Position numbers and translations under genes: made by a program. The notes below the pieces were generated by a model. The model was not told the DNA's origin. It was given only the letters and a program-made list of their open reading frames with translations, and ran no database searches. A DNA stretch of 64,000 bases, from positions 62,001 to 126,000 of IMG/VR virus record IMGVR_UViG_3300037042_006844; one strand, given 5' to 3'. This document shows, one piece after another, positions 9,470 to 48,478 of the stretch (the stretch's first letter is position 1; the number at the start of each line of letters is the position of its first letter).

Positions 9470-9587
9470 ATCAATAAATAGGCATGTGGGCACAAAAAAA
9501 GGTCAGCACATTATATGCTGACCTTTGAAATGGTGGACGTGGGGAATTATTTTTGACATTTTCTCATCACCTCCACTATTTATTGGT

Positions 9588-10169
9588 ATGGCAAAAACTC
9601 AAGTAAAATGCGAATCATGTGGAAATCTTTTTCAAAAAGAAAACAAAGAAATCAACCGTTGTAAAAAACGAGGTATCGTTGGGCACTATTGCAGTAATTC
9701 ATGTGTAGCAAAACATAGAAACTCAACAAGGACAAAACAGTATTGGGAAAAGCAATACGCTAAACACCCCACACTAAAAGGATTGGCAAACAATCGAGAA
9801 GACATATATTCTCCGTTCAGACCATTCCTAAACAAAGGACGAGCATCACTCAAAAAGAATGGATGTGATATTGATGTGGAATATCTAAAGAAACTTTGGG
9901 ATGAACAGCGAGGAAAGTGTCCATATACTGGTGTTCAAATGATATTGCCGAAAAACACACTGGATCACACAACAGTAAAATCACTGAAAAAAGCAAGTCT
10001 TGATCGTATAGATTCCTCTCAGAGTTATATCAAAGGAAATATTGAATTTGTTTGTATGGCAGTCAATTTAGCAAAAAACAATTTCACAAAAAAAGCCATG
10101 ACTTCATTTTTACGCGAAGTCATGGAATCTATGAATGCTCTTAGTGTTAATCAAGTGCAACCAACGTGA
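9588..10169 (+). CDS. HNH/His-Cys-type homing endonuclease inserted at the tmRNA 3' end
   Basis: Zn-finger CxxC...YCSxxC N-terminus; GKCPYTG...SLDRIDSSQSYIKGNIEFVC..VNLAK. Confidence 0.8.
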   Translation: MAKTQVKCESCGNLFQKENKEINRCKKRGIVGHYCSNSCVAKHRNSTRTKQYWEKQYAKHPTLKGLANNREDIYSPFRPFLNKGRASLKKNGCDIDVEYLKKLWDEQRGKCPYTGVQMILPKNTLDHTTVKSLKKASLDRIDSSQSYIKGNIEFVCMAVNLAKNNFTKKAMTSFLREVMESMNALSVNQVQPT

Positions 10170-10190
10170 CGGTGGCATTCTTCTGCACTC

Positions 10191-10571
10191 TGGACGTAAC
10201 GGGAGTTGAACCCGTGTCTTTAAGAACTGTTAGCTCCGGACTACATGTGTATGCAGTTTGAATTTGTTAGGAAATGCAATCGAAACTACCAAAAATGCAC
10301 TTCTTAGGATTTGCTGTATTTCGATTGAAACCACAGATCAACTTTTTCAATCATAGTTCGTAAATGACATTTGTTTCGGCTACCGAACGATCACCGAACA
10401 AACGGACAACCTTTATTAGGCTGCAACTGCTGCGACATTCTCGTAAGAGAAGTCATAGCTCACTACATTTTCCTTAGCGGTTAATGTTTAGATAGATTTT
10501 TTAGGAAGCCAACTATCATCTTCCACATGCCCATTGCGAACGCACTCTTAAATCGAAACCAGTATACGCCC
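10191..10571 (-). ncRNA. ssrA: tmRNA, tag peptide AKENVVSYDFSYENVAAVAA*
   Basis: Acceptor GGGCGTA/TACGTCC with G3.U70, T arm GGGTTCAACTCCC, tag ORF 10478-10416 ending AA*; CCA not encoded. Confidence 0.92.
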
Positions 10572-10672: not shown

Positions 10673-10716
10673 GTTTCTGCTAACTGTTTATAACTATAAC
10701 AGAACCCAGATAAAAG

Positions 10717-11616
10717 TCAAGTGGAAAGTGTATTTTCACACGGCTCATACAGTTTTATGTAGTCTTTTCCATATTTTTTCTCCACATATTGTATAAACGG
10801 ACCGATGTCATTTTTGCCAATCACTTGTAATTTATGAGGAAAATATGCAAATTTTGCCTCAACCTTATCGTCCATATATCCTTTCACTTCCACATAATCA
10901 CCATTCTCCAAAATAAAATCTGGAAAAAATTTTAACTTTTTTCCAGCAAATTCATATTGAAATCCGTCGGTATTTCTTTTGAAATTTACGCCATGTTCCA
11001 ATTGATAAACTACCCATGCCAATTCCCACGAACTATTACAATAATACCCTTTATACCACCCTTGCTTCCCGCGACCTCCCTTGACACGATATCCACCCGA
11101 TTTGCCTTTCATATATCCGGTTTTTACCGCCCACTCACCATAACATTTATGAGAGCAACAGATTCTTTTAGATTTTTTAGTTTTGTAAAATGGCAGTTGA
11201 CATATAGGGCAGTTCAAATAGTTGCCGGTTTTTGGATTGTTTTTATAAAATCCAATTATTGTTTTGGATTTGTCGGATAATATTTTCTTTTCAACATCAG
11301 TCCACCTATGATGCCCACCATTTTTTTGGGTATAAATTGCAGCACATTTTGATGAACAATAATTATTATCATACCTTTTCTCAAATGGGATAGCGGAATT
11401 ACAATGTAAACATTTTTTAGGGGATTTATAATATTCTTCCCGCCGCATCTCGTGTTTTTGTGGAAGATGGTCCGCAATTGTGTGTTTGTTGTGCTCTCTG
11501 CTACAAACATTAGAACAGAAATGATTTTTATATCCTTTCTTACCCATTCTTTTTATTTCGGAAATGGATTTTGGAAATTCTATACTACATTGGGAACAAT
11601 TTACTGGTATTTTCAT
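10717..11616 (-). CDS. homing endonuclease, PD-(D/E)xK type with Zn-finger repeats
   Basis: Three CxxC..CSxxC units; SSWE...FFPDFIL...YVEVKGY. Confidence 0.75.
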   Translation of the reverse strand: MKIPVNCSQCSIEFPKSISEIKRMGKKGYKNHFCSNVCSREHNKHTIADHLPQKHEMRREEYYKSPKKCLHCNSAIPFEKRYDNNYCSSKCAAIYTQKNGGHHRWTDVEKKILSDKSKTIIGFYKNNPKTGNYLNCPICQLPFYKTKKSKRICCSHKCYGEWAVKTGYMKGKSGGYRVKGGRGKQGWYKGYYCNSSWELAWVVYQLEHGVNFKRNTDGFQYEFAGKKLKFFPDFILENGDYVEVKGYMDDKVEAKFAYFPHKLQVIGKNDIGPFIQYVEKKYGKDYIKLYEPCENTLST

Positions 11617-11637
11617 ATATCAATAAATAGCAATTTG

Positions 11638-11757
11638 TGGAGCGAAAAGAAGGTTTTTGAACTGACTATTTTAGTTAGATTTGGTTCACATGGAGAATTT
11701 TGAAATCTCGCATTATCAGTTTGGAAGACTGACGCTCTACCATTGAGCTATACCCGC
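11638..11757 (-). pseudogene. degenerate tRNA-Gly(TCC)
   Basis: Perfect 5' half GCGGGTATAGCTCAATGGTAGAGC..ctTCCaa; T arm and 3' acceptor scrambled; CGCTCCA end displaced. Confidence 0.6.
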
Positions 11758-13120: not shown

Positions 13121-13369
13121 TGACGTAGCTGTAGCCGATGTCCTGTTCTATTCCTACATTTATCTCAGCATTGCTGCTGGTTGTTCGTTAAAAACAACTG
13201 CTCCAACCTTGTCCTAATAACGTGCAGCACTACACTCGGACACTTTAGGATTACTGCTAATTTGTGGTAATAACGAGTTAAAAACTCTTCCAACATCTGC
13301 TGTGCAGCATCGAACTTCCTCTAACACTGAATGGTCAAATCCAATGCCAGCGTAGGATCGCTTGCGTCA
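13121..13369 (-). ncRNA. rnpB: RNase P RNA (compact, ~250 nt)
   Basis: P1 GACGCAAGC/GCTACGTC; GAGGAAGTTCGATG pairs with CATCGGCT (P4 with bulged U); P2 TCCTAC/GTAGGA after AGATAAAT; P3 hairpin. Confidence 0.85.
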
Positions 13370-13456
13370 AAATTAAATAATTCTTTATATAAAGGGCATC
13401 ATTGCCAATTCATATTCATATTTATATACTCAATCGGTCAACCCCGATTTGCAACA

Positions 13457-14089
13457 ATGAACACAATGAAAACCACAATGATGAAACTTGTTTTAACGAT
13501 GATGTTAACATCATTCTGTTTGGTATCAAACGGAGGCACCATTTTTGGAACCTCGCATGACCTCGGCACAAAAGGCTGGGGAACAACAGAAACATGTAAA
13601 TTTTGTCACGCGCCACATCAAAACCAAGCTGTAGCAAACGCTCCCCTTTGGAATCGCACGTTAACAGTTCAAACATATGTTCTATATGGCAGTCCTTCTT
13701 ATAAAGGAAAAGGTAATCAGCCCGGAGTAGAATCGTTGATGTGTTTGAGTTGTCACGATGGAACTGTCGCACTTGATTCTTTTGGAAACGGTGGAATCAT
13801 ACAACAAGGCACTCATATGATCGGTGAAAATCGAATGATTGGTGGTAAAGGCACCCTTGCCCACGATCATCCAATCGCATTTGCATATGATGCAGCACTA
13901 TTGGCAGAAGATAATAAACTAGTTCAGCCAGTGTCGGCAGCATTCGTTGATGCAAGCCATAATATTCCATTGTATGCAACCAAAATGGAATGTGCTTCAT
14001 GCCATGACCCGCACGATAATGGTTTCGGCAATTTTTTGCGTATGGACAATTCAGCAAGTGGATTGTGCATAAAATGCCATTTGAAATAA
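13457..14089 (+). CDS. secreted multiheme cytochrome c (doubled-CXXCH / cytochrome c3-like family)
   Basis: Signal peptide; four CXXCH (CKFCH, CLSCH, CASCH, CIKCH), CHxPH and DHPI motifs. Confidence 0.9.
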   Translation: MNTMKTTMMKLVLTMMLTSFCLVSNGGTIFGTSHDLGTKGWGTTETCKFCHAPHQNQAVANAPLWNRTLTVQTYVLYGSPSYKGKGNQPGVESLMCLSCHDGTVALDSFGNGGIIQQGTHMIGENRMIGGKGTLAHDHPIAFAYDAALLAEDNKLVQPVSAAFVDASHNIPLYATKMECASCHDPHDNGFGNFLRMDNSASGLCIKCHLK

Positions 14090-14139
14090 CACTCGAAGTA
14101 TCTAAACAACAAAAGCCATCTTTTACGATGGCTTTTTGT

Positions 14140-14349
14140 TTATATTTTCTCGACGAGGATTTGTTCCCCTAGTGATTTGTTCATGCAAACCTTTGTATTG
14201 CAAATCATACAAATCAAATTGGTAGATATTACACTGATGACTACTCCCTTCACTAGCCCCATCTCTTGCAAGCGTTGACTGTCTATTTTAATTTGAACTA
14301 GCTTGCCCTTCTCACCCAGCTTCAAATCGGTTAATCTACAGAGGCTCAT
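14140..14349 (-). CDS. feoA: FeoA family protein
   Basis: LTDLKLGEKGKLV...RLQEMGLVKGVVI...ILVE. Confidence 0.85.
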   Translation of the reverse strand: MSLCRLTDLKLGEKGKLVQIKIDSQRLQEMGLVKGVVISVISTNLICMICNTKVCMNKSLGEQILVEKI

Positions 14350-14594
14350 TAAATTTCAGTCAGTGTTTGATGAACGTGCCCTGTGGCAACTAGATTTTTT
14401 CTCGTAACATATGATCACTAGTTACAATTTTTTCTAAAATTACACCCTTAACTGACGTATAAATAGATGCTACGATAAAATTTGCTAGCAACATGCGTTC
14501 TTGGTGGTATTTATCGTCCTATATGAATTAGACGTTTATTTTGGATTCCACAAACACTTTACTGTGTTTACCATGTATCTATCGTAACAAAAAT

Positions 14595-14668
14595 TGGCAG
14601 GGGATGAAGGAATCGAACCTTCACTAGTTGATCCAAAGTCAACTGCACTACCATTATGCAAATCCCCA
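14595..14668 (-). tRNA. tRNA-Gln(TTG)
   Basis: cloverleaf, CCA. Confidence 0.9.
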
Positions 14669-14681
14669 GTTCTAAAAAAAT

Positions 14682-14755
14682 TGGTGCGGGATGAGAGAAT
14701 TGAACTCTCCACTCAACATTGGCAATGTCGTGTTATACCGATTAACTAATCCCGC
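14682..14755 (-). tRNA. tRNA-Gly(GCC)
   Basis: cloverleaf, CCA. Confidence 0.9.
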
Positions 14756-14759
14756 ACTA

Positions 14760-14847
14760 TGGAGTGTTGTGTAGGAATCGAACCTACTCCGTGTTTTACC
14801 ACATCCGTTTTGCAGACGGCTGACTTCCCATTCGTCATCAACAACAC
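14760..14847 (-). tRNA. tRNA-Cys(GCA) with long variable arm
   Basis: ctGCAaa loop, U73, extra arm TGTGGTAAAACACG. Confidence 0.8.
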
Positions 14848-14871
14848 AAATTAAACACACCAAACTAAAAA

Positions 14872-14947
14872 TGGTGGACCTGACAGGGATCGAACCTGCT
14901 ACATTCTGCTTGCAAAGCAGACGCTCTCCCAAATGAGCTACAAGCCC
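14872..14947 (-). tRNA. tRNA-Ala(TGC)
   Basis: cloverleaf, G3.U70, CCA. Confidence 0.92.
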
Positions 14948-14953
14948 AGAAAA

Positions 14954-15047
14954 TGGCGGAAGCGAAGGGTGCTGCCCCCTTAGTCGTTTTTTAGACGACG
15001 GCAGTTTAGCAAACTGCTGTGAAAACCTAACTATTCACGTCACTTCC
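14954..15047 (-). tRNA. tRNA-Ser(GCT)
   Basis: long arm, G73, atypical T loop. Confidence 0.8.
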
Positions 15048-15053
15048 AAAAAA

Positions 15054-15143
15054 TGGCGGTATACAGAGGACTCCAACCCCAGCCCCTTGCGGGACCAATC
15101 TGATTTCGAATCAGTTCTAGCACGACTGTCTAGTTTATATACC
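15054..15143 (-). tRNA. tRNA-Ser(CGA)
   Basis: long arm, G73, CCA. Confidence 0.8.
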
Positions 15144-15171
15144 AAAAATGGCGGATGAGCCATGCTCCATA

Positions 15172-15678
15172 TTAAATTTTCTTTTCTACCGTATAACCGT
15201 TGTGTATAAGAACCTCTTTACACAATTTTATAAAATCTTCTACTAACAAATCGCCTTTTGCCATATTAGCTTCTTTACAAGCCAACCCTAAATTTGTTAT
15301 TTCACATCCACCATTTTTCGACACAGGAATAATATGGTCACAATTATAGGTTTTTGGTTCTAATAAGTCAATCTTTCTTCCTGTTAAGTAACATACAGGA
15401 GTTTCTAACACTTTCTCTTTGAATTCTTTTGAAGAAAAGACTAGATCGGCTCTTTTTCCTTTACAATTTCTATTTCCATTTATAAAACTAAAATTGTCTT
15501 TTTTCCTTTTAAGAATTCCATTTAGAGTTTTTTTATAACTCTTAAATCTAATTTTTGACTTTTCTTTTTGTCCTATACCGCAATGATATGCTATAGTTCC
15601 TTTAGAACAACCTAAAAGTTTTCGTATTTCAGCATACGATCTGCCTTCACTTCTCAATCTTAATATGTTTTCTTTCAT
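15172..15678 (-). CDS. HNH homing endonuclease with N-terminal HTH
   Basis: GRSYAEIRKLLGCSKGTI; CYLTG...DHIIPVSKNG..EITNLGLACKEANMAK. Confidence 0.85.
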   Translation of the reverse strand: MKENILRLRSEGRSYAEIRKLLGCSKGTIAYHCGIGQKEKSKIRFKSYKKTLNGILKRKKDNFSFINGNRNCKGKRADLVFSSKEFKEKVLETPVCYLTGRKIDLLEPKTYNCDHIIPVSKNGGCEITNLGLACKEANMAKGDLLVEDFIKLCKEVLIHNGYTVEKKI

Positions 15679-15750
15679 ACTAATACATATGAAAGAGTTC
15701 GAATAAAAATCAATAAAAATATTCGAACCAGTATTTTTATTTTCAAAGAG

Positions 15751-15838
15751 CGGAAGCCAAGGGAATCGAACCCCTGCCGCCTTTCGACGGTTTAGTTTTC
15801 AAGACTAACGCAGCAAACCAACATCTGACCTGACTTCC
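15751..15838 (-). tRNA. tRNA-Ser(TGA), no encoded CCA
   Basis: long arm, ctTGAaa, 3' end abuts HNH cassette. Confidence 0.85.
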
Positions 15839-15844
15839 GTAAAT

Positions 15845-15919
15845 TGGTGGAGCCTAGCGGTTACGCTCCGCTGACCTCGCATTGCAAGTGCGATGTGTTA
15901 CTATTAGCACCAAGACCCC
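15845..15919 (-). tRNA. tRNA-Ala(TGC)
   Basis: G3.U70, atypical T loop AGCGTAA. Confidence 0.8.
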
Positions 15920-15928
15920 ATTAAACTG

Positions 15929-16005
15929 TGGTGCGAACGATGGGAGTCGAACCCATACTGTAGAAATTTTAAGTTTCTTGTCTCCTTCCGTTGGACTACG
16001 TTCGC
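15929..16005 (-). tRNA. tRNA-Leu(TAA), short variable loop
   Basis: cloverleaf, CCA. Confidence 0.88.
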
Positions 16006-16011
16006 AAAAAT

Positions 16012-16089
16012 TGGTAGCATCGACTGGATTCGAACCAGCACTGTTTTCATTTTGAGTGAAACGCCTCCTTCCAATTGGGCTACGATGCC
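16012..16089 (-). tRNA. tRNA-Leu(CAA), short variable loop
   Basis: cloverleaf, CCA. Confidence 0.88.
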
Positions 16090-16092
16090 ATT

Positions 16093-16337
16093 ATGAACTA
16101 CCCACCCGCTAAAGCAAGTGGGTTTCCCCGTTGCTCTAACATTAGGGTTTCTATAGGGTAGTTCCTACCCTTTACAAACTCTGTTTTTGGAAATGAGAAG
16201 TCCAAGATATTCTTGGCCGCATTCACATCTCTATCGTGATTTGTGTTACAATTGAGAAAGTATCAAACTATTGTCAATGGGTCGCATTCATCCCAAACCC
16301 TATAGGGAATTGGGTTTTCTGCTCCCACAAAGATAAA
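16093..16337 (-). mobile_element. internally deleted IS200/IS605 element (TnpB C-terminal remnant plus both ends)
   Basis: Reads NCNTNHDRDVNAAKNIL; right end hairpin ...GGGTAGTTCAT; left end TTTAT..TGGGAGCAGAAAA. Confidence 0.8.
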
Positions 16338-16351
16338 TTACAAAAAAATCG

Positions 16352-16912
16352 TCAAAACTTTTCGAGTGTGATTACGTCCAGCCCATTTTTCCATGCGTTT
16401 AGGTAATTCTCACTTTTTTGTTTGTTCCGCATATCCCACACGGTTGTTGCACCTACGCACGGATCAATCAACTCAAGCAAACTTGGAGTCCAAGTCGGAT
16501 CAACGATGTCTTCAAGAACTAAAATACCACCAGATTTAACTTTTGGCAAGTAGTTTTTCAAAAAGAACACCATCGACTCATATGAATGAGGACCGTCGTC
16601 TATCACTATATCAAAAAAATTGTTCTGAAACAAATTCGCGGATTCAATCGTGTATCCGTCTCTTTGCATAAACGTAATTCGACTTTTGTCTACGAAATTA
16701 CAATCGTTTATGTCCATCCCATATATTTGGGCATTTGTAAAAAAATCTCTCCATGTTGTGATCGATCCGCCGCTTCCGACTCCCAACTCTAGCACGTTTG
16801 CTGTGGAGTGTTGTCTAGGAGAAAAGAGTTTATCATAAAACTCGTCATAATATCCTAAAACTTCTTTGTCGGTTCGCGGTCCTATTTGAATTGAAAACTC
16901 TTTGAATGTCAT
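16352..16912 (-). CDS. class I SAM methyltransferase (TDK...VLELGV...IDDGPH family)
   Basis: LELGVGSG, YGMDI, IDDGPH, GGILVLED. Confidence 0.85.
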   Translation of the reverse strand: MTFKEFSIQIGPRTDKEVLGYYDEFYDKLFSPRQHSTANVLELGVGSGGSITTWRDFFTNAQIYGMDINDCNFVDKSRITFMQRDGYTIESANLFQNNFFDIVIDDGPHSYESMVFFLKNYLPKVKSGGILVLEDIVDPTWTPSLLELIDPCVGATTVWDMRNKQKSENYLNAWKNGLDVITLEKF

Positions 16913-16949
16913 ATGTTCAACAATACATAGATCGTCAATAACTAAAAAG

Positions 16950-17027
16950 TGGTGGCACCGACAGGATTTGAACCCGCACATTTTCCGGTCTAAACGGAAC
17001 GTCTCCTTCCAGTTGGACTACAGTGCC
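16950..17027 (-). tRNA. tRNA-Leu(TAG), short variable loop
   Basis: cloverleaf, CCA. Confidence 0.88.
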
Positions 17028-17039
17028 TCTAGTAAAAAA

Positions 17040-17117
17040 TGGTGGTGATGACTGGATTCGAACCAGCACTGTTTACCTCCTCAAGGTAACGCCTCCTTCC
17101 AATTGGGCTACATCACC
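17040..17117 (-). tRNA. tRNA-Leu(GAG), short variable loop
   Basis: cloverleaf, CCA. Confidence 0.88.
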
Positions 17118-17127
17118 GATCTTAAAA

Positions 17128-17205
17128 TGGTCCACCCGCACAGATTTGAACTGTGGTTATTCTTGCTCCCAGGGCAAGTGCCATACCAGGCTAGGCGACG
17201 GATGG
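17128..17205 (-). tRNA. tRNA-Pro(TGG)
   Basis: cloverleaf, CCA. Confidence 0.85.
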
Positions 17206-17211
17206 AATAAA

Positions 17212-17285
17212 TGGTAGGCAGTAGTGGAGTCGAACCACTCATTTACGGATGTAAACCGAACGTTATACCGATTAACTAACCGCCC
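17212..17285 (-). tRNA. tRNA-Val(TAC)
   Basis: cloverleaf, CCA. Confidence 0.88.
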
Positions 17286-17319
17286 ACACTAAAATTGTTA
17301 ACTGTCACTACATTTCAAC

Positions 17320-17420
17320 TTTACCGCCATATGGGTTCTGCTTTCGGCATATCACCCAGTGACCGATCAAGTGTTTTGCTTTTCAGCGGGGACACCAGAG
17401 AGAGTTTCAACCCCAACCAC
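17320..17420 (-). ncRNA. conserved structured leader of tRNA array 1
   Basis: Shares TTGAAACTC and TTGATnGGTC..TGGGTG.TATGCCGAAAGCAGAACCCATA with 35568-35685. Confidence 0.6.
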
Positions 17421-17426
17421 ATATAC

Positions 17427-17454
17427 ATCTTACCATATCTCACCAACTTGTCAA
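17427..17454 (-). promoter_or_regulatory. sigma70-type promoter of tRNA array 1
   Basis: TTGACA-16 bp-TAAGAT. Confidence 0.75.
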
Positions 17455-17479
17455 CAGGCTTTTTGCAAAACATTTCAAC

Positions 17480-17614
17480 AAAAAAACCGTTGGTCATTTT
17501 AAGACCAACGGTTACTTGAGAATGTTCGGGAAAAAGCAACCATCAGCCTCAGGTCAAACTAGGTTGACCCGCGAGCACTAACAAGGATGATTGCAGACTG
17601 TTTTTCATGTTCAT
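17480..17614 (-). promoter_or_regulatory. leader-peptide attenuator 1 (MNMKNSLQSSLLVLAGQPSLT*)
   Basis: ORF 17614-17549; 15-bp antiterminator 17548-17534 with 17517-17503; terminator 17513-17480. Confidence 0.8.
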
Positions 17615-17723
17615 TAATACATATAACGAAAATTTGAAAAACGTTAAAAATTTCTGTATTTACACAACAAAAAACCGTTGGATTGCTCCAACGGTCGCGG
17701 AAATGGATTGATAATCTATTATC

Positions 17724-18428
17724 TTAGAATGTCAATCTGAGACCCGCACAATACACCAAATCGTTTTCAAACTGCTTTAGTGCAAATGCTTTAGTTGTGG
17801 TTTGCCAATTGCCATTGTCATACCAAGCAACTTCGGCGTATGGGGTAACTGTTCCCCATTTATATGCAAACGGACGAGTCAACGTTGCCTTGGCATTCAA
17901 AGCTTCGTAGTCAGTCATCTTGCCCCATTCGACTGCTGGAGTAAGAACCAGACCGAGGAAGAGTTTTTGAGCACGTTCAGCACCCACAAAATAACCATTC
18001 TGATTTAGTTCAAAATTGAATGCTCCACGAACATATGGGGTGATCCAAGGGTTCGCAATCGCCAGCTTTGCGCCAGCTTCGGTTGAATTTCCGATGCCAC
18101 TTGACACGGTTTGATGGCGCAGAACAGTTGCATCTGCACGAAACGAGATGTTGGTTGAGACTGGAAGGCTTCTGCCAAGACCCAACAACCAGTGGCTTTG
18201 ATCTTGACTGCCATTTGCCAATAGCAATCCGCTGACATACACATCAGCATACTTGAGTGATTTCACTGCACCAATTCCGGCGTATGGAGTATCGGTGGCA
18301 TAGGTAACGCCGTTAACCACGTATGCAGTTGTATAACCACCTTCGACGGCAACAGTTGCGACATCTGCCGCACGGACAATAGTTACAGCCGCCAGTAGTG
18401 TTAATACGAACAATGTTAGTTTCTTCAT
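17724..18428 (-). CDS. outer-membrane beta-barrel protein (TorF-like putative porin)
   Basis: Signal peptide, amphipathic strands, C-terminal GLRLTF. Confidence 0.75.
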   Translation of the reverse strand: MKKLTLFVLTLLAAVTIVRAADVATVAVEGGYTTAYVVNGVTYATDTPYAGIGAVKSLKYADVYVSGLLLANGSQDQSHWLLGLGRSLPVSTNISFRADATVLRHQTVSSGIGNSTEAGAKLAIANPWITPYVRGAFNFELNQNGYFVGAERAQKLFLGLVLTPAVEWGKMTDYEALNAKATLTRPFAYKWGTVTPYAEVAWYDNGNWQTTTKAFALKQFENDLVYCAGLRLTF

Positions 18429-18706: not shown

Positions 18707-19042
18707 TCAGGATTGCTTGCGAAGCTTGCGTTGAATGGTTTTATCTTTTTCTGGCATGTAGGCATAGAACGCAGTATTCTTCGTAGAATCTTCTTCAAGA
18801 ATGCGAATCGTGTCCATAGAAATACCAGCAATTTTTACTATTGCGCTTCGAATAAATTCAAAATTGCTGCTACCAGAAGTTATGATGCCCATGCCATAAG
18901 CTAGTGGACGATAACTGACTTCTTGAATTCCATAATGATTTTTCAAGGTATTGCGAACCAATGTTTTCAACCCATCGTTGAAAACAGCAGCAGCAATTTC
19001 TTGCATACTCATATTGTTGTTTATAATGATACTGTCATTCAT
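18707..19042 (-). CDS. hypothetical protein
   Basis: ORF behind TTGACG..TATAAT promoter. Confidence 0.6.
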   Translation of the reverse strand: MNDSIIINNNMSMQEIAAAVFNDGLKTLVRNTLKNHYGIQEVSYRPLAYGMGIITSGSSNFEFIRSAIVKIAGISMDTIRILEEDSTKNTAFYAYMPEKDKTIQRKLRKQS

Positions 19043-19139: not shown

Positions 19140-22100
19140 TTAGAAAAATTTTCTATAGTCTGAGAGCGAAAACCCTTCGCCCCAAGCTTTTCGCTTTGGT
19201 TCTGGCTTTGCCTCCGGGCGAGTTGCTTTTGTTGCTGCGCCCAATGTTTTAGATGTGTCTGTTGGCCCATCTGCTGGTTTCTCTGCTGGTTTCTCTGCTT
19301 TGCCAGCAGAAACGGCTGTGTTATAAATATTTTTTGGATTTTTGCGGTTAAACACTTGACGCAACGATCCAGCCACCGCAATGATGTCGGTCATAGCTTT
19401 TGTCAATTCTGTATTGAATGTCATAATCTCATTGCTGGTAACTTCTTTAAGAAAGTCCTTGTCTGCTTCAAGTTCTTTTTTAATGGCAGCGGGATTGCCA
19501 ACGCTTTGTTGGAAACCAGCCGAGCTTTTTACAATGGAATTATAAACTGAGTTCAGAAAAACTTTCAGTGCAACCAAACCTTTTGCATCGGTTGCTTTTG
19601 CTGCCATCAAAGTTTGAAGACGTTGCGGCAAATTTTTGAATACAGTGTCTGCTTTCAACGTTGCAAGTTGTTTGCTCAACTCGGGATTGCTATAACCAGT
19701 TGCTCCCGCTGCTGGTTTTGCACCTGCTGGTGCGCCAGCTTCTTTGAACACGTTCGGCTCTTCTTGATCCTCATCTCGCTCTTTTCGCTCTTTCCGAATT
19801 GGCATTCCCGCTGGCGCAGTTCCCGCTGGCTTTGGAGCGGGTGCTGGTGCTGCTGCTGGAGCGGATGCTGTTGGTGATCCAAGCAAATCTAAACCTTGTG
19901 TTGCTTTATCGACAATAGGGTTGACTTTACCATCCGTCTTTTTATTGACCACAACGTCACCCAGAGTATAGATATTGGTTGCCAAATCACGCAACACTGG
20001 TTTTGTCAATGTCGTTGGATTTGTGCGGTTCAACAATTCTCCAAGATCGATCATGCGTGACAAAAACACTTTGACAGTTTTGATTTTGTTTGCGTCCAAT
20101 GGAGTGTTACCACCTGGCAATGCTGCTGGAGGAGTTCCTGGAGGAGGAGTTGCTGGATTTGGGTCTTTCGGAGGATCAACTGGAATGGTTTTTGGATCAG
20201 TTGGTGCCGTTGGACTTGGATTAGGGTTGGCGGGCGTAGGCGTTTCTGTTGGAGGAACGGTCAACGGTTCTGGCAACGGCTTGCTTGCTTCGGGAGTTGC
20301 GCCATACAGCCAGCTTCTAACCTTCGTCAAATATGGATAAACGCCAGGGAATACTTTGTCTTTGGTTTTGAAAAAGTCCAGAATGTCTTTCTCGGTTTTC
20401 ATACCAAGCTGACTTTCCATATTATTCAAAAATTTCAAATAATCGCTCTCAACTTGTTTGTAATCGAGTCGGGCATTTTTACCACCGACTTTTGGACCAC
20501 CAAACATGAAATTCTTTGCAGCGGTCAATGGGTTGGCTTCTGAAATAATTGCCAATCCAGTTCCGTCTGCTTTCAATTCGGCTTTGAGGTAATCAATTTC
20601 GGCTTGTTGTTTTGACACCGCTCGCTCTTGCAATCCAAACTTTTTCTTCAAAGCACCAGTAACACCTTTGCGCATCATTTGGTTTGCAACGTTCGGGTTC
20701 GCCAACAATGCTTGTGCCTCTGCTGGAGTGGTAACGTTATTTAACCAACCGTTAATTGCTCGTTGAGGAATTCCAGTCTGTTGTTCTGCGCCCTTGATAT
20801 CACTGAAATCACGCAACGCATTCAATGCCGAAATTTTTGGTTGCAACGCTGCCATATTAACACTGGTTGGAGCCATTGCTGCTGCTGCTGCGCCGCCTCC
20901 TGGCAAACCTTGATTTGCAGCCAACGCAGACACATTGTTGGGGTCTGTGCCAGCTAATGGATATTCTCCAGTTGGTTGCGCGTCAAGGGAAGCTTGAGCT
21001 GGGTCTGTTGTTGCGAATGGATATGCTCCAGGGCCTTCACCATCAACGGGTGCTACTGGTGCTGCGGATGTTACGGCATCGTCACCCGTGGCTGGAACAT
21101 CCGTCCCAGCCATACTCGAAGCATCGCCAGTCTCGCCAGTAGCAGGAGTGTCGCCAATGCTATACTCTGCTTCTGGATCTGGAACGGGTTCGGAATACGG
21201 AACGTCTGTTCCCGCTGCTTGTGAAGGATCGGTGGTTCCAGTTACACCACTAGCTGGATCATCACCGATGCTATAATCTGCGGCTGGACTTGCTGGACCT
21301 GGCAATGCGGCTCCACCTGGATCGGCACCACCCAGCCAGCCAGCAATTTGGTCATAAAACATACCCAGCAATTTACCAACGGCAATACCAGAACCAGACA
21401 CCATTGCACCTTTCGCAGCAGCTTGAGCAGGAGTTTCACCTTTGACCATGCCCAAAAGAGTTCTTAAAGCTGTGCCGATCAAGAATTTTTTAAGAAGCGG
21501 AATAGCCACCAAGGCTCCGCCTCCGCTAGAAAGTGCCATAACAGACACCAAACCTCCCACAATCATATTGGATAGTGTAGGATGTTGACGAGCAAAAATA
21601 CCCAACTCGTCGAGAATATTGTCGGCACCTTTAACCAGACCAGTGCTGCGCAATTTATCGATCAACTGTTGAATGTGACCCATACCAGCTTGAACTTCTG
21701 CCGGTGTAGGAGGAGCACTCAACTTGGGATTTTTGGAAAGATTGGCGAAACGTTTACCAATCAAAGCACCAACTTTATCAATATTGACTGGATTGGTTTT
21801 TTGATCTTCGGCAGTCGGTGTAAATGGACTTGGTCCACCACCAACAATTTTCTCCGTATTCTTTTTGAGAGTGCCAAACAAATTTTGAACCATTTGTTGG
21901 TTTTTAGCATCGCCAAACCCCTTGCCTAGCGGCGTTGTCATGTAGGATTTGGCACGGGCTAAACCACGTTGGAAAATATCTTCTTTTAGAACTGGGTGCT
22001 CATTAAGATATTCGCACAAAATATCTACTTGAATGTCGTGAGCAGTTTGTTCACCCAACTGAATAGCGTAATACAGGTTTTGTTTTTTGTCCAAACCTGA

Positions 22101-22205
22101 ATAAATTTCAGAGAGTAGTTTTTTAGAAGTGGATTGTGAAGCAACGAACTCGGTGACGAGATTCCTTACTAAAGTATCTTTTGCTAGTTGTTTGAATTGT
22201 GCCAT
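19140..22205 (-). CDS. large Pro/Ala-rich hypothetical protein (probable virion/internal protein)
   Basis: 1021 aa, hydrophobic Gly-rich segment, internal YSIGD and TDP repeats. Confidence 0.75.
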   Translation of the reverse strand: MAQFKQLAKDTLVRNLVTEFVASQSTSKKLLSEIYSGLDKKQNLYYAIQLGEQTAHDIQVDILCEYLNEHPVLKEDIFQRGLARAKSYMTTPLGKGFGDAKNQQMVQNLFGTLKKNTEKIVGGGPSPFTPTAEDQKTNPVNIDKVGALIGKRFANLSKNPKLSAPPTPAEVQAGMGHIQQLIDKLRSTGLVKGADNILDELGIFARQHPTLSNMIVGGLVSVMALSSGGGALVAIPLLKKFLIGTALRTLLGMVKGETPAQAAAKGAMVSGSGIAVGKLLGMFYDQIAGWLGGADPGGAALPGPASPAADYSIGDDPASGVTGTTDPSQAAGTDVPYSEPVPDPEAEYSIGDTPATGETGDASSMAGTDVPATGDDAVTSAAPVAPVDGEGPGAYPFATTDPAQASLDAQPTGEYPLAGTDPNNVSALAANQGLPGGGAAAAAMAPTSVNMAALQPKISALNALRDFSDIKGAEQQTGIPQRAINGWLNNVTTPAEAQALLANPNVANQMMRKGVTGALKKKFGLQERAVSKQQAEIDYLKAELKADGTGLAIISEANPLTAAKNFMFGGPKVGGKNARLDYKQVESDYLKFLNNMESQLGMKTEKDILDFFKTKDKVFPGVYPYLTKVRSWLYGATPEASKPLPEPLTVPPTETPTPANPNPSPTAPTDPKTIPVDPPKDPNPATPPPGTPPAALPGGNTPLDANKIKTVKVFLSRMIDLGELLNRTNPTTLTKPVLRDLATNIYTLGDVVVNKKTDGKVNPIVDKATQGLDLLGSPTASAPAAAPAPAPKPAGTAPAGMPIRKERKERDEDQEEPNVFKEAGAPAGAKPAAGATGYSNPELSKQLATLKADTVFKNLPQRLQTLMAAKATDAKGLVALKVFLNSVYNSIVKSSAGFQQSVGNPAAIKKELEADKDFLKEVTSNEIMTFNTELTKAMTDIIAVAGSLRQVFNRKNPKNIYNTAVSAGKAEKPAEKPADGPTDTSKTLGAATKATRPEAKPEPKRKAWGEGFSLSDYRKFF

Positions 22206-23031: not shown

Positions 23032-23105
23032 TGGAGCCTAATACTGGAATCGAACCAGTGTTTGATCATTACGAGTGAACTGTTTTACCACTAAACTAAT
23101 CAGGC
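23032..23105 (-). tRNA. tRNA-Thr(CGT)
   Basis: cloverleaf, CCA. Confidence 0.88.
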
Positions 23106-23139
23106 ATAAATGTATTCTCTGACAGATTTTTTCAAAAAA

Positions 23140-23213
23140 TGGAGCCTCCAGCGGGTAACGCTCCTGCGTTTCAGCTTTACCAAAGCCGTGTAATACTTTT
23201 ATACTATGGAGGC
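23140..23213 (-). tRNA. tRNA-Thr(GGT)
   Basis: cloverleaf, atypical T loop. Confidence 0.8.
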
Positions 23214-23331
23214 ATTGAAAGGGCGACGACACGTTTTTGGAACCATGTCGTCGCATCTCCCGTAATGACATTTTCGGCACTCATACGTCCAAATTGACGT
23301 TCCATAGTCATCACTCCCCTTCAGGAGAAAT

Positions 23332-30768: not shown

Positions 30769-30842
30769 TGGTGGCAATGGCGGGACTTGAACCCACAACT
30801 TGTGCAGTTATCAACGCACTACTCTAATTGAGTTACATCGCC
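30769..30842 (-). tRNA. tRNA-Ile(GAT)
   Basis: cloverleaf, bulged anticodon stem. Confidence 0.72.
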
Positions 30843-43905: not shown

Positions 43906-44114
43906 GTTTGTCCTACTAAATATCGTTGTCCTCGTTTCCAACCACTGGGATTATCAAGTTGAGGGCATCCCAAATTTTCATTTTCCACTTTGGTTTTGCC
44001 ATGTCCAATAATATTGGAATAACCACCACTGTCTGCTTCGTATAATACTACTTTCTAACGAAGTTCCTCTGGTGTCATTTTATTTAATGCTTTCAATAAT
44101 GCGTTGTATGTCAT
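43902..44114 (-). pseudogene. 70-codon gene with in-frame TAG at codon 20
   Basis: MTYNALLKALNKMTPEELR*KVVLYEAD...; frame ends in ATGA overlap with next gene. Confidence 0.6.
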
Positions 44115-44376
44115 AGGTTTTTATGTTATGCTTTTTCTTTTGGTGGCCCCGGAAACCTGTTTATATGCCAAAAATTTGTGATGGGACTCTCAATCAATTC
44201 AGTTTGACAATCCAGCAACATTCCAGCTACGATATCCCTGTAGATTTCACTTCGATCACATAGTGGTTGTTCGGGCATTTCAAGCCGATTCATGCGATCC
44301 AAAACATCTTCCAACACAGCAATCTTCACGGTCAATTCAGTATAATTAGACATATATATGTGAAAAAAGAAAACGG

Positions 44377-44793: not shown

Positions 44794-44854
44794 GTTATAA
44801 CAACCATGTTACCATCCAAATCACAGAATGTCAATGACCCTCAACAGGAATAGG

Positions 44855-45310: not shown

Positions 45311-45528
45311 CTCGCGGGCAGGGGTCGAGACCCGGCCTGCCATGTTCAGAACCACTTGACGGGAGTCCCCCTACCCCCTCCCCCCCATACTTGGCGTTTT
45401 GAGGCAGGGATATATACCCCCACCCCCGTCAAGTGTATAAACTGGGCAGGGGTGCGGCATACCCCTACCCGTTGTGAGTTTATATTGGCACTGCCCCCAC
45501 AGCTTGTGTGCCAAGTGGCTGGGACTCT

Positions 45529-46387: not shown

Positions 46388-46427
46388 TGTGTTAAGATTA
46401 TATCAGAAATGCCCGGGGTTGTCAAGC

Positions 46428-48473: not shown

Positions 48474-48478
48474 AAAAA

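What the first reader, a model, noticed from the sequence alone, without database searches (positions are those of the whole stretch)
13457..18428. Multiheme cytochrome c, FeoA and an outer-membrane porin in a phage
A secreted tetraheme cytochrome, FeoA and a beta-barrel lie within 5 kb. These are rare phage cargo, pointing to manipulation of host iron/electron transfer in a diderm, probably low-oxygen host. They are not co-operonic, so a functional link is inference.
Basis: partly seen in the sequence, partly recalled or inferred. Interest (0 to 1): 0.6.

Follow-up and report, generated by a model that had tools for sequence, protein, structure and literature searches.

The report
Jumbo phage carrying a nanowire-type cytochrome
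A 303-kb T4-like phage from oxygen-poor lakes and sediments carries a gene, taken from Verrucomicrobia, for the four-heme subunit that bacteria polymerise into "nanowires"; a small iron-uptake helper (FeoA) lies next to it and a phage-family outer-membrane pore 3.6 kb away, and the three are separate cargo items, not one machine.

Summary
All three genes are real, intact and at the stated coordinates. The window is part of a 303,564-bp T4-like jumbo phage.

- **Cytochrome (13457-14089, +).** It is a full-length homologue of OmcE, the tetraheme subunit of solved cytochrome nanowires (E 4.5e-24 and 1e-22). All four CxxCH motifs and the four distal histidines are kept. It nests with 100/100 support in a clade whose named members are Verrucomicrobia, mostly "subdivision 3".
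- **Cluster context.** In bacteria the gene always sits in a cluster with an NHL propeller, a large protein and multiheme cytochromes. The phage carries the subunit alone, at phage GC content, with its own promoter-like site and terminator.
- **Other phages.** Four further huge or jumbo phage lineages also carry a lone OmcE-like gene. One of them is this gene's sister.
- **FeoA (14140-14349, -).** It is a genuine Pfam FeoA. It recurs in 7 related phage contigs.
- **"Porin" (17724-18428, -).** It is a confidently modelled 12-strand outer-membrane barrel. Its family is found almost only in viruses (65 IMG/VR contigs) and it is a backbone gene of this phage clade.
- **Assembly.** Misassembly is excluded by four independent ENA assemblies, plus Logan contigs from a further study that cover the stretch in pieces.

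The three genes have different inheritance histories, so a joint system is not supported. The likely role of the cytochrome, supplying subunits to the host's electron-transfer apparatus, is inferred.

The parts
13402..13430 (+). Sigma-70-like promoter match (TTGCCA-17-TATACT), 27 nt upstream of the cytochrome start codon
   Evidence: One search gives 10 of 12 matches. This is a consensus match only: the number of such sites in the region is no higher than in shuffles. Its position inside the longer 13331 ORF favours 13457 as the true start.
13457..14089 (+). OmcE-family tetraheme c-type cytochrome, 210 aa, with a signal peptide. CxxCH motifs at C47/C50/H51, C96/C99/H100, C179/C182/H183 and C204/C207/H208. 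Distal His at H34, H54, H138 and H186.
   Evidence: ORF and motifs. Pfam and NCBIfam. PDB chains 7tfs_A (E 4.5e-24) and 9yuq (E 1.1e-22), aligned end to end. Invariant columns. Phylogeny.
14111..14136 (.). Hairpin with a 10-bp stem and T-runs on both strands, shared by the convergent cytochrome and FeoA genes as a bidirectional terminator
   Evidence: Terminator-like sites are enriched in the region: 16 found against 4.8 expected.
14140..14349 (-). FeoA, 69 aa, an SH3-like accessory protein of the Feo ferrous-iron transporter
   Evidence: Pfam PF04023 E 8.4e-10, full model length. Homologues at 52-58% identity in 7 related phage loci, 2.7-5.8 kb downstream of the barrel on the same strand. No FeoB in the phage.
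14595..14947 (-). tRNA cluster Gln(ttg), Gly(gcc), Cys(gca), Ala(tgc)
   Evidence: Window 14589-15841, which holds this cluster and the HNH gene, is 98.6% identical to a distantly related huge phage.
15172..15678 (-). HNH homing endonuclease with an N-terminal HTH, lying in a 587-bp insertion (15163-15749) that other strains lack
   Evidence: Pfam. Absent from L076-L079. A contig joint skipping 15150-15750 in run X2. 100% protein identity in L005.
15929..16089 (-). Two tRNA-Leu genes (taa, caa)
16098..16332 (.). 235-bp strain-specific insertion or repeat element, with a partial second copy elsewhere in the genome
   Evidence: Absent in L076-L079. Contig breaks and summed contig depth of 234 against 41 in run X1. 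An 82%-identical copy at G000:183411-183572.
16352..16981 (-). SAM-dependent methyltransferase (Methyltransf_24)
16950..17285 (-). tRNA cluster Leu(tag), Leu(gag), Pro(tgg), Val(tac)
17673..17696 (-). Terminator-like hairpin just downstream of the barrel gene
17724..18428 (-). 12-stranded outer-membrane beta-barrel, 234 aa, with a signal peptide and a C-terminal Phe. It belongs to a virus-restricted family distantly related to Gcw_chp/TorF putative porins.
   Evidence: AF2 pLDDT 90.3. Foldseek matches PcoB, KdgM and OmpG. The nearest ESM Atlas clusters are 96-100% viral, followed by a TorF-family cluster at TM 0.74. hhalign against a verrucomicrobial Gcw_chp protein gives 94.6% probability. 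104 homologues. 65 IMG/VR loci.
18707..19042 (-). Conserved 111-aa ORF directly upstream of the barrel, possibly co-transcribed with it
   Evidence: Syntenic in 28 related loci. Promoter-like site at 19078-19051.
19140..22205 (-). 1021-aa Ala/Pro-rich protein, a conserved left-hand neighbour in the clade's backbone
   Evidence: No Pfam or PHROG match.

Best explanation
The stretch is the variable island of a 303-kb T4-like jumbo phage. The island is rich in tRNA genes and homing endonucleases and lies between the backbone genes orf111/barrel and orf145/PhoH. It holds three independent envelope or redox cargo genes.

**1. A self-contained cytochrome cassette (promoter-like site, ORF, terminator).** It encodes an OmcE-family tetraheme cytochrome captured from a Verrucomicrobia lineage (its named clade members are mostly 'subdivision 3'). 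In those bacteria the gene heads a conserved cluster: subunit, NHL beta-propeller, a roughly 650-690-aa protein, then one or two large multiheme cytochromes. The phage took only the subunit.

Inferred mechanism: during infection the pre-protein is exported by Sec. The host's cytochrome-c maturation system attaches four hemes, since the phage has none of its own. The host's own cluster proteins then handle the mature subunit, which joins or replaces the host subunit in the extracellular or periplasmic electron-transfer structure. This would keep anaerobic respiration to external acceptors running while the phage replicates. The logic is the same as for cyanophage psbA: carry the subunit, not the machine.

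**2. FeoA.** It probably stimulates the host's FeoB ferrous-iron transporter. That would be useful in Fe(II)-rich anoxic water and for a heme-hungry and Fe-S-hungry infection.

**3. The barrel.** It is a clade-wide phage gene. The host's BAM machinery would insert it into the host outer membrane as a small channel or a surface-modifying protein.

**Shown here:** the gene identities, the conserved ligand residues, the donor clade, the lone-subunit pattern, recurrence in other phages, and the integrity of the assembly.

**Inferred:** export, heme attachment, polymerisation, and any physiological benefit.
For: **Identity**
- Full-length matches to the solved OmcE filaments 7tfs_A and 9yuq, with every CxxCH and distal His aligned. 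9YUQ is the Desulfuromonas soudanensis OmcE nanowire (PMC13712944). That 7TFS is Geobacter OmcE is from my own knowledge.
- The phage protein keeps 49 of the 50 columns that are invariant in 28 cellular homologues, although it is only 55% identical to their consensus.

**Donor**
- In the careful IQ-TREE the gene lies in a 100/100 clade of 26 rows. Seven of the eight named rows are Verrucomicrobia, five of them titled 'subdivision 3'; the eighth is a 'Bifidobacteriaceae' bin that is probably mis-binned.
- Best hits reach 63% identity.
- The phage's two monoheme cytochromes, elsewhere in the genome, are 50-55% identical to genes in all 5 MAGs of that clade that were searched, 4 of them titled subdivision 3.

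**Ancient capture, not contamination**
- GC of the gene matches the phage.
- The phage branch is long, 0.86 against a median of 0.31.
- Independent assemblies keep the same arrangement.

**Lone subunit**
- 75 of the 80 bacterial loci, from many phyla, have an NHL-propeller homologue within 10 kb, in most of them directly downstream of the subunit. The large ORF and a multiheme cytochrome follow in many of them.
- Viral loci have only the subunit.
- The whole 303-kb genome has no homologue of the propeller, the large ORF or the extra cytochromes, and no CcsA/CcmF-type maturation gene.

**Recurrence implies selection**
- The sister gene (98/90 support) sits on a roughly 194-kb jumbo-phage-like contig seen in many assemblies.
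- Further lone copies are in records of 536 kb, 166 kb and 494 kb. The first groups with Myxococcales at full support and the second with Rhodocyclaceae at weaker support; the third is a long branch that could not be placed. Two of them lie in tRNA islands like this one.

**Cassette structure:**

**FeoA:**

**Barrel:**
Against: - There is no evidence of expression. No RNA run holds the stretch.
- Polymerisation is untested. The dimer-plus-heme prediction gave no verdict and the heme-free AF2 model is unusable at pLDDT 47.
- Petersen et al. (PMC13712944) accept an OmcE homologue as a likely nanowire only when the barrel and propeller genes are nearby. The phage fails this criterion by itself and depends on an unidentified host.
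- The cellular subfamily it came from has never been shown to form filaments. It carries a ninth conserved His (PLWNH) that solved OmcEs lack.
- OmcE-like genes are rare in Verrucomicrobiota overall, 3 of 401 sampled genomes. The host must therefore belong to a narrow subset, and no direct host link such as a CRISPR spacer or Hi-C was obtained.
- Verrucomicrobial FeoA proteins are only 31-35% identical to the phage FeoA, so FeoA says nothing about the host.
- Whether cytochrome filaments are needed for electron transfer even in Geobacter is disputed (PMC11077965).
Confidence: 0.55

Rival explanations
1. The phage cytochrome is a soluble periplasmic tetraheme electron carrier or electron store, not a filament subunit. 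It would buffer or redirect periplasmic electron flow during infection, possibly together with the phage's two monoheme cytochromes.
For: The accessory genes thought to be needed for secretion or mounting are absent from the phage. Filament formation has never been shown for the verrucomicrobial subfamily. The phage also carries two secreted class-I cytochromes c at G000:166950-167624, which suggests a broader periplasmic redox kit. Petersen et al. note that OmcE-like tetrahemes are widespread and that not all need be nanowires.
Against: Every residue that defines the OmcE heme core is kept, including the N-terminal His (I did not verify which His is the inter-subunit ligand). Bacterial homologues are almost always next to the propeller, large-ORF and multiheme-cytochrome cluster. 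This argues that the family works with that apparatus and not alone.
Confidence: 0.2
2. The phage subunit acts against the host structure and does not support it. It could be a variant subunit that caps, remodels or masks host cytochrome filaments. The purpose would be to block superinfection, if the filament or its pore is the receptor, or to shut down host electron export.
For: The phage lineage evolves about three times faster than cellular ones. Both phage copies share a substitution (PLWNH to PLWNR) at a His that is conserved in 92 of the 95 sequences in which the motif could be read. Phage-encoded envelope proteins often serve exclusion. PMC13712944 itself raises phage recognition of nanowires.
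Against: The same Arg is found in both solved, functional OmcE filaments, so the change is not obviously disabling. All heme ligands are retained. Nothing is known about the receptor.
Confidence: 0.12
3. Cytochrome, FeoA and barrel form one phage-encoded porin-cytochrome or iron-handling system.
For: They lie within 5 kb of each other and all relate to the envelope, iron or heme.
Against: They sit in three transcription units on two strands. Their phyletic patterns differ: the barrel is in 65 loci, FeoA in 7, and the cytochrome was not found in the 38 barrel-carrying relatives that could be searched. A 12-strand barrel is far smaller than cytochrome-sheathing barrels such as the 26-strand MtrB (my knowledge). 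The phage barrel is unrelated to the large ORF of the bacterial cluster. The other phages with OmcE-like genes lack the barrel.
Confidence: 0.04
4. The cytochrome is bacterial DNA joined to a phage contig by misassembly or mis-binning.
For: The best homologues are bacterial. No GenBank phage has a match.
Against: Four independent ENA assemblies keep the same junctions. In a lake-water run from another study, a 22-kb contig carries the cytochrome and FeoA together with the phage DNA on their other side. Depth is even across the pieces. GC is that of the phage. The best bacterial identity is only 63%.
Confidence: 0.01

Closest known systems
OmcE tetraheme cytochrome nanowire subunits (Geobacter sulfurreducens, PDB 7TFS; Desulfuromonas soudanensis, PDB 9YUQ; PMC13712944, PMC9473688)
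   Same: Similar length (210 aa against 218-232). Both have a signal peptide, four CxxCH motifs and the same four distal His. The alignment runs end to end at E 1e-22 to 5e-24. Even the PLWNR motif matches. The closest bacterial relatives share the published cluster logic of propeller, large protein and multiheme cytochromes.
   Different: It is encoded by a phage, without any accessory gene. It derives from a verrucomicrobial subfamily, and Verrucomicrobiota are not among the five phyla listed in PMC13712944. Filament formation has not been shown. No glycosylation genes are linked to it.
Phage auxiliary metabolic genes that copy one subunit of a host membrane complex, such as cyanophage psbA (my knowledge), or amoC, a NapC/NirT multiheme cytochrome and the OprP porin in freshwater amoC-phages (bioRxiv 10.64898/2026.06.18.733297)
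   Same: Both are large freshwater phages. In both, the host-derived gene groups phylogenetically with the predicted host, only a part of the system is carried, and redox and porin genes occur in one genome.
   Different: This phage has no amoC. Its cytochrome belongs to the OmcE nanowire family, not NapC/NirT. Its barrel is a virus-specific family, not a host-like OprP. The cytochrome is fully ameliorated and only 63% or less identical to any bacterial gene.
Gcw_chp / TorF-family putative porins (PF09694) and 12-strand outer-membrane channels such as KdgM and PcoB
   Same: Similar size, a signal peptide, a 12-strand barrel and a C-terminal Phe. TM 0.74 to a TorF-family cluster. Foldseek E 6e-7 to 3e-5 against PcoB and KdgM. 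hhalign gives 94.6% probability against a verrucomicrobial Gcw_chp protein.
   Different: There is no direct Pfam or NCBIfam hit. The profile match covers only the N-terminal 60%. The nearest sequence and structure clusters are 96-100% viral. No close homologue was found in 401 Verrucomicrobiota genomes.
FeoA of the FeoABC ferrous-iron transporter (PF04023)
   Same: A full-length domain match above Pfam's threshold, and the usual size of about 70-75 aa.
   Different: No feoB partner is present in the phage. No GenBank phage has a match. T4 proteins with the same SH3-like topology are not iron proteins (PMC12152347), so an iron-unrelated role cannot be excluded.
Borgs and other Methanoperedens extrachromosomal elements that encode multiheme cytochromes (bioRxiv 10.1101/2023.08.02.551345, PMC13444090)
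   Same: These are also mobile elements that carry extracellular-electron-transfer cytochromes of their host.
   Different: Those are archaeal non-viral or unclassified elements with large multiheme cytochromes. Here a tailed bacterial virus carries a single tetraheme filament-type subunit.

Membership tests
OmcE-type tetraheme cytochrome (nanowire subunit family) | Four CxxCH heme-attachment motifs in a protein of about 200-230 aa | tested here: met
   The motifs are at C47-H51, C96-H100, C179-H183 and C204-H208.
OmcE-type tetraheme cytochrome (nanowire subunit family) | Four further conserved His that serve as distal (bis-His) ligands, as named in PMC13712944 | tested here: met
   H34, H54, H138 and H186 align with His in 7tfs_A and 9yuq. 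They are invariant in 30 homologues.
OmcE-type tetraheme cytochrome (nanowire subunit family) | Significant end-to-end sequence similarity to a structurally solved OmcE filament | tested here: met
   7tfs_A at E 4.5e-24 (query 10-210 against chain 8-232) and 9yuq at E 1.1e-22.
OmcE-type tetraheme cytochrome (nanowire subunit family) | N-terminal secretion signal | tested here: met
   Residues 1-26 have Lys residues followed by a hydrophobic stretch, modelled as a helix over residues 3-20. Homologues align from there on. No dedicated signal-peptide predictor was available.
OmcE-type tetraheme cytochrome (nanowire subunit family) | Neighbouring genes for a beta-propeller lipoprotein, a large outer-membrane barrel and multiheme cytochromes (the criterion of PMC13712944 for likely nanowire formers) | tested here: not met
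   These genes are absent within 10 kb and from the whole 303-kb phage genome. They are present next to the closest bacterial homologues. The barrel fold of the bacterial large ORF was not tested.
OmcE-type tetraheme cytochrome (nanowire subunit family) | Polymerisation, with a His from one subunit ligating a heme of the next | tested here: inconclusive
   The dimer with 4 hemes gave no verdict, score 0.02. Settling this needs cryo-EM or a prediction with 8-12 hemes.
OmcE-type tetraheme cytochrome (nanowire subunit family) | The OmcE fold | tested here: inconclusive
   The heme-free AF2 model has pLDDT 47 and is not fit for a fold search.
FeoA (PF04023) | A full-length FeoA domain scoring above Pfam's gathering threshold | tested here: met
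   39 bits against a cut-off of 23, covering profile positions 2-74 of 74.
FeoA (PF04023) | Encoded together with its partner FeoB | tested here: not met
   No FeoB_N match in the phage genome, although the control genomes all gave a match. It would have to act on a host FeoB.
Gcw_chp / TorF-family putative porin (PF09694) | A direct match to the family model | tested here: not met
   No Pfam or NCBIfam family for the phage protein.
Gcw_chp / TorF-family putative porin (PF09694) | Remote homology and a shared fold with family members | tested here: met
   hhalign gives 94.6% probability and E 6e-8 over 137 columns against a verrucomicrobial protein that itself matches PF09694 at E 1e-17. ESM Atlas gives TM 0.74 to a TorF-family cluster.
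Outer-membrane beta-barrel protein | A signal peptide, an even number of antiparallel strands closing a barrel, and a C-terminal aromatic residue | tested here: met
   12 strands at pLDDT 90.3. The sequence ends in Phe, and Phe is invariant in 32 homologues. 67 PDB outer-membrane barrels match at E <= 1e-3.
Porin-cytochrome trans-outer-membrane conduit (MtrAB / Pcc type) | A large barrel that sheathes a multiheme cytochrome, with the two genes co-encoded and co-inherited | tested here: not met
   The barrel has only 12 strands. The genes are in separate transcription units. There is no co-occurrence in relatives.
Phage auxiliary (host-derived) gene / moron | Nested within a host clade, flanked by phage genes, absent from close relatives, with its own transcription signals | tested here: met
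   The promoter is only a consensus match.

The most novel reading that the evidence does not exclude
Huge phages of anoxic habitats repeatedly capture only the polymerising subunit of OmcE-type cytochrome nanowires, in order to rewire their hosts' extracellular electron transfer.

In the verrucomicrobial phage lineage the capture came with a shared His-to-Arg change (PLWNH to PLWNR). This change turns the nine-His pattern, conserved in 92 of the 95 readable family sequences, into the eight-His pattern of proven filament formers.

On this reading the phage subunit would behave differently from the host's. For example, it might extend filaments that the host subunit caps or anchors. Infection would then change how far and how fast a cell exports electrons.
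Probability: 0.12. Interest if true: 0.85.

Novelty: new variant of a known kind. Interest (0 to 1): 0.62.

Why it matters
- **Gap in knowledge.** Cytochrome nanowires are central to microbial metal reduction, interspecies electron transfer and bioelectrochemistry. Their distribution and physiological role are still debated.
- **Extension to viruses.** I found no paper in the searchable library that describes a virus-encoded OmcE-type subunit. Finding lone subunit genes in at least five huge or jumbo phage lineages extends the idea of auxiliary metabolic genes to extracellular electron transfer. Three of these genes group with bacterial homologues of a different phylum each: Verrucomicrobiota and Myxococcota with full support, Pseudomonadota with weaker support.
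- **Evidence of usefulness.** It would be independent evolutionary evidence that the subunit alone is useful and limiting in vivo.
- **Ecological range.** It also flags OmcE-type clusters in Verrucomicrobia of stratified lakes. Verrucomicrobiota are not among the phyla listed in the 2026 survey.
- **Practical use.** Phage versions are compact natural variants for testing which residues control polymerisation.
- **The barrel.** It defines a sizeable, virus-restricted outer-membrane protein family of unknown role.

Tried and rejected
- **Complex prediction.** Two copies of the mature phage cytochrome with four hemes gave no verdict (score 0.02). This is evidence neither for nor against binding.
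- **AF2 of the cytochrome.** Run with a 30-sequence alignment but without heme, it reached pLDDT 47, so no fold search was run on it.
- **GenBank phage collection.** No match for any of the three proteins.
- **Single-sequence scan of IMG/VR with the cytochrome.** It found nothing. The alignment-based scan found 5 loci.
- **Barrel against the bacterial cluster's 234-aa ORF.** I asked whether the phage barrel equals the 234-aa ORF called in the bacterial OmcE cluster. It does not (BLASTP E 0.14). That "ORF" is the C-terminal part of the roughly 650-690-aa cluster protein.
- **amoC-phage hypothesis.** No AmoC match, but the control genomes did not give a match either, so this is weak.
- **Lipoprotein shared with the sister phage.** The gene next to the OmcE-like gene in L161 has a 41%-identical homologue at G000:129800-130390. 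It turned out to belong to a broad viral lipoprotein fold family, not to anything specific to cytochromes.
- **Word-based homologue search for FeoA.** It returned only 2 proteins, which is a limit of the method for a 69-aa query.
- **Alternative genetic code for the ORF-poor 44-64 kb part of the window.** The crude test was uninformative and no suppressor tRNA was seen. No other code was used anywhere.
- **Intra-species dN/dS.** There are too few SNPs, 1-3 synonymous and 1 nonsynonymous per gene.
- **The original OmcE structure paper (PMC9357133).** It is not held. I therefore could not verify which His makes the inter-subunit bond.

Full report
**1. What the window is**

The window is bases 62001-126000 of a 303,564-bp IMG/VR virus record, which CheckV rates 89% complete.
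- The record encodes a T4-type major capsid protein (Pfam Gp23, E 5e-72) and a large terminase (E 5.7e-15).
- The window itself has a tail-fibre gene at 4385-5701 and a baseplate-hub-like gene, plus PhoH.
- It also holds 32 tRNA genes and a tmRNA.

It is therefore a T4-like jumbo phage. None of the three proteins of the finding has a relative in 50,697 GenBank phage records.

**2.

- The cytochrome ORF (13331-14089, likely start 13457) has a signal peptide and four CxxCH motifs. It matches Paired_CXXCH_1 above threshold.
- FeoA (14140-14349, minus strand) matches PF04023 over the full model.
- The 234-aa ORF at 17724-18428 (minus strand) has no family hit. It folds with pLDDT 90.3 into a 12-strand barrel behind a signal helix. 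Its best PDB matches are outer-membrane channels PcoB, KdgM and OmpG.

The three genes sit in separate transcription units.
- The cytochrome has a promoter-like site at 13402-13430. It shares a bidirectional hairpin terminator (14111-14136) with the convergent FeoA.
- The barrel has its own terminator at 17673-17696.

**3. Not an assembly artefact**

- Four independent ENA assemblies (L076-L079), about 99% identical in DNA, keep the order cytochrome, FeoA, tRNAs, methyltransferase, barrel.
- Logan contigs of the probable source run cover the stretch with zero differences at depth 41-47.
- In a lake-water run from another study the stretch is covered in pieces at depth 12-13. One 22-kb contig carries the cytochrome and FeoA together with the phage DNA on their other side.
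- Twenty runs from nine studies hold the stretch or part of it. They are sediment, lake-water and freshwater metagenomes.
- The cytochrome's GC (41.7%) equals that of the genome (41.0%). Verrucomicrobial loci with its homologues have 57-66%.

**4. What the cytochrome is**

A search of PDB sequences gives two strong, end-to-end hits: 7tfs_A (E 4.5e-24) and 9yuq (E 1.1e-22).
- 9YUQ is the OmcE nanowire of Desulfuromonas soudanensis (PMC13712944).
- 7TFS is, to my knowledge, the Geobacter sulfurreducens OmcE filament.
- All four CxxCH motifs align, as do the four further His residues (H34, H54, H138, H186). That paper names these as the conserved heme ligands.

OmcE and OmcS filaments are held together partly by a His of one subunit ligating a heme of the next (PMC9473688).

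**5. Where it came from**

- The protein has more than 3,300 homologues. The best is 63% identical, and the named ones are Verrucomicrobiota.
The top ones are "Verrucomicrobia subdivision 3" MAGs whose isolate names indicate a lake survey.
- A careful IQ-TREE with 54 rows places the phage gene inside a 100/100 clade of 26 rows. Seven of its eight named members are Verrucomicrobia, five of them titled subdivision 3; the eighth is a "Bifidobacteriaceae" bin that is probably mis-binned (quick tree of 101 rows).
- Among 401 evenly sampled Verrucomicrobiota genomes, only 3 have such a gene at E <= 1e-20. The donor, and presumably the host, therefore belongs to a narrow subset.
- The phage's two monoheme cytochromes c (G000:166950-167624, outside the window) are 50-55% identical to genes in all five MAGs of that clade that were tested, four of them titled subdivision 3. 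I did not run a control in other phyla.

**6. The phage took only the subunit**

- 75 of the 80 bacterial loci have an NHL-propeller homologue within 10 kb, in most of them directly downstream of the OmcE-like gene. In many loci a roughly 650-690-aa protein without any Pfam family and one or two large multiheme cytochromes follow, and a sigma-54 two-component pair often lies upstream.
- This matches the published OmcE cluster of subunit, propeller lipoproteins, large barrel and two multiheme cytochromes. I could not fold the large protein, so its barrel nature is taken from the literature.
- None of these accessory genes occurs near the viral copies or anywhere in the 303-kb genome.
- The phage also lacks a CcsA/CcmF-type maturation gene.

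**7. It recurs in other huge phages**

- The sister of the window's gene (98/90 support) is P0038. It lies on a roughly 194-kb contig seen in many assemblies. That contig has a split RNA polymerase beta' gene, co-directional ORFans and a protease-like gene, so it looks like a jumbo phage.
- IMG/VR holds three more lineages with lone OmcE-like genes. They are a 536-kb record whose gene groups with Myxococcales at full support, a 166-kb record grouping with Rhodocyclaceae at weaker support, and a 494-kb lineage (three records) on a long branch that could not be placed.
- In the 536-kb and 494-kb phages the gene sits in a dense tRNA island, next to a tmRNA in one case, just as it does here.

Repeated capture of the subunit alone, together with retention of 49 of 50 family-invariant columns along a long phage branch, argues for selection on a heme-binding function in phages.

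**8. An unexplained detail**

- The single invariant column that the phage protein has changed is the His of a PLWNH motif, which is Arg in the phage.
- The sister phage copy carries the same change.
- Only one of the 93 non-phage sequences in which the motif could be read has it.
- Both solved OmcE filaments also have Arg there.
- The cellular subfamily thus conserves nine His for four hemes, while proven filament formers and the two phage proteins conserve eight.
- PMC13712944 speculates that a nine-His OmcE-like protein could act as a filament anchor or terminator.

I cannot tell whether this residue touches a heme.

**9. FeoA and the barrel**

*The barrel.*
- It has 104 homologues and occurs in 65 IMG/VR contigs.
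- The nearest ESM Atlas clusters are 96-100% viral.
- No close homologue was found in 401 Verrucomicrobiota genomes.
- Weak hits there are Gcw_chp/TorF-type putative porins, to which the phage family is remotely related (hhalign 94.6%; TM 0.74).

*Synteny.* The clade's backbone is the 1021-aa protein, orf111, the barrel, a variable island, orf145, orf125 and PhoH.

*FeoA.*
- It lies in the island in 7 relatives, where the barrel is 52-56% identical. It is missing in the closest relatives, where the barrel is 65% identical.
- The phage has no FeoB.
- The cytochrome was not found in any of the 38 searchable barrel-carrying records, two of which are complete.
- One 22.7-kb metagenome contig related to L005 does list an OmcE-like 202-aa gene 7 kb from a barrel gene.

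The three genes therefore have three different histories. Their proximity reflects a shared hotspot, not a shared function.

**10. The island is mobile**

Compared with the 99%-identical strains, this genome has extra segments at 9541-10190, 10676-11706 (a zinc-finger/endonuclease-like ORF), 15163-15749 (the HNH endonuclease) and 16098-16332. A 1.25-kb cassette holding four tRNAs and the HNH gene (14589-15841) is 98.6% identical to a distantly related 286-kb phage.

**11. Mechanism and verdict**

*Shown:* an intact, ancient, host-derived cassette for an OmcE-family subunit, in a phage of low-oxygen freshwater habitats, with parallels in other huge phages.

*Inferred:*
- export by Sec;
- heme attachment by the host;
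- use of the host's propeller, large-protein and multiheme-cytochrome apparatus;
- a benefit through sustained electron export.

FeoA plausibly boosts Fe(II) uptake through the host's FeoB. The barrel is a clade-wide outer-membrane protein of unknown substrate.

A soluble-carrier role or an exclusion role for the cytochrome cannot be excluded. Tests of polymerisation were uninformative.

The literature I could search describes phage NapC/NirT cytochromes and OprP porins, and cytochromes on archaeal elements. It describes no virus-encoded OmcE-type subunit.

I rate this a new variant of a known kind, the phage auxiliary gene, with interest 0.62.

Noticed in passing
window 14589-15841; L005:11035-12287: A 1.25-kb cassette of four tRNA genes and an HNH endonuclease is 98.6% identical in DNA to a distantly related 286-kb phage contig (GCA_902726265.1). 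The HNH protein is 100% identical, while that phage's barrel is only 53% identical. This looks like recent transfer by a homing endonuclease between co-occurring huge phages.
   Followed up: partly
window 9541-10190, 10676-11706, 15163-15749, 16098-16332, 23040-23327: These segments are present here but absent from the 99%-identical strains L076-L079. For the last segment only L077 extends far enough to show the gap. They hold a 214-aa ORF, a 299-aa zinc-finger/endonuclease-like ORF, the HNH gene and a 235-bp repeat element. The repeat has a partial copy at G000:183411-183572 and an excess of summed contig depth in the source run.
   Followed up: partly
window 13655-13657 (residue 67 of the cytochrome): The PLWNH motif reads PLWNR in this phage and in the sister jumbo-phage copy (P0038). 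Of the 95 family sequences in which the motif could be read, 92 have His and 3 have Arg: these two phage copies and one cellular sequence. Both solved OmcE filaments have Arg. This may mark a functional shift between a nine-His and an eight-His pattern.
   Followed up: partly
G000:166950-167276 and 167295-167624 (outside the window; L164:6950-7624): Two adjacent secreted monoheme class-I cytochromes c (Pfam Cytochrom_C / Cytochrome_CBB3). They are 50-55% identical to multi-copy genes in all five verrucomicrobial MAGs searched, four of them titled subdivision 3. A nicotinamide phosphoribosyltransferase-like gene and a PRPP-synthetase-like gene (assigned by eye only) lie just upstream at G000:162714-165958.
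   Followed up: partly
L006:9917-10534, L008:10001-10618, L007:10001-10636: Lone OmcE-like genes occur in IMG/VR records of 536 kb, 494 kb and 166 kb. In the first two the gene lies inside dense tRNA arrays (19 and 34 tRNA-type genes in 20 kb, including a tmRNA in L006). The L006 copy is sister to a Myxococcales gene and the L007 copy groups with Rhodocyclaceae.
   Followed up: partly
L161:10001-11139; G000:129800-130390 (L163:3800-4390): On the roughly 194-kb jumbo-phage-like contig, a 174-aa lipoprotein gene abuts the OmcE-like gene, its start codon overlapping the cytochrome's stop codon. This phage has a 41%-identical homologue 54 kb away from its own cytochrome. The fold family is widespread in viruses (lectin/transglutaminase-like look-alikes), so the link is probably a coincidence.
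   Followed up: yes
window 10191-10571 and the tRNA genes up to 48554: There is a tmRNA (tag AKENVVSYDFSYENVAAVAA) and 32 tRNA genes, all on the minus strand. Two have aberrant anticodon loops, at 30769-30842 (4-base 'gata') and 48402-48473. No suppressor tRNA was seen.
   Followed up: no
window 44000-64000: This part has higher GC (45-50%) and markedly fewer long ORFs under the standard code than the rest of the window. A crude stop-codon test did not point to a different code. The cause was not examined.
   Followed up: partly
L087 (CAYUGC010000120.1): A MAG labelled Bifidobacteriaceae carries a complete verrucomicrobial-type OmcE cluster and nests among the subdivision-3 sequences. The contig is probably mis-binned.
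   Followed up: no
L081:10088-11818 and L002:14164-15828: The N-terminal part of the large multiheme cytochrome of the bacterial cluster is itself homologous to the OmcE-like subunit (38-39% identity over about 170-200 residues). The cluster therefore contains a fused paralogue of its own subunit.
   Followed up: no
G000:1-127 and 302537-302663: The first 127 bases of the virus record recur exactly about 900 bp before its end. The length suggests an assembler k-mer overlap. The record may be a nearly closed circle or a terminally redundant genome, although it is labelled linear.
   Followed up: partly
L005:937-2354: A related huge phage carries a DUF2490 outer-membrane-barrel gene and a PstS-like phosphate-binding protein gene close to its copy of the barrel. 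Phages of this clade therefore collect several envelope and uptake genes.
   Followed up: no
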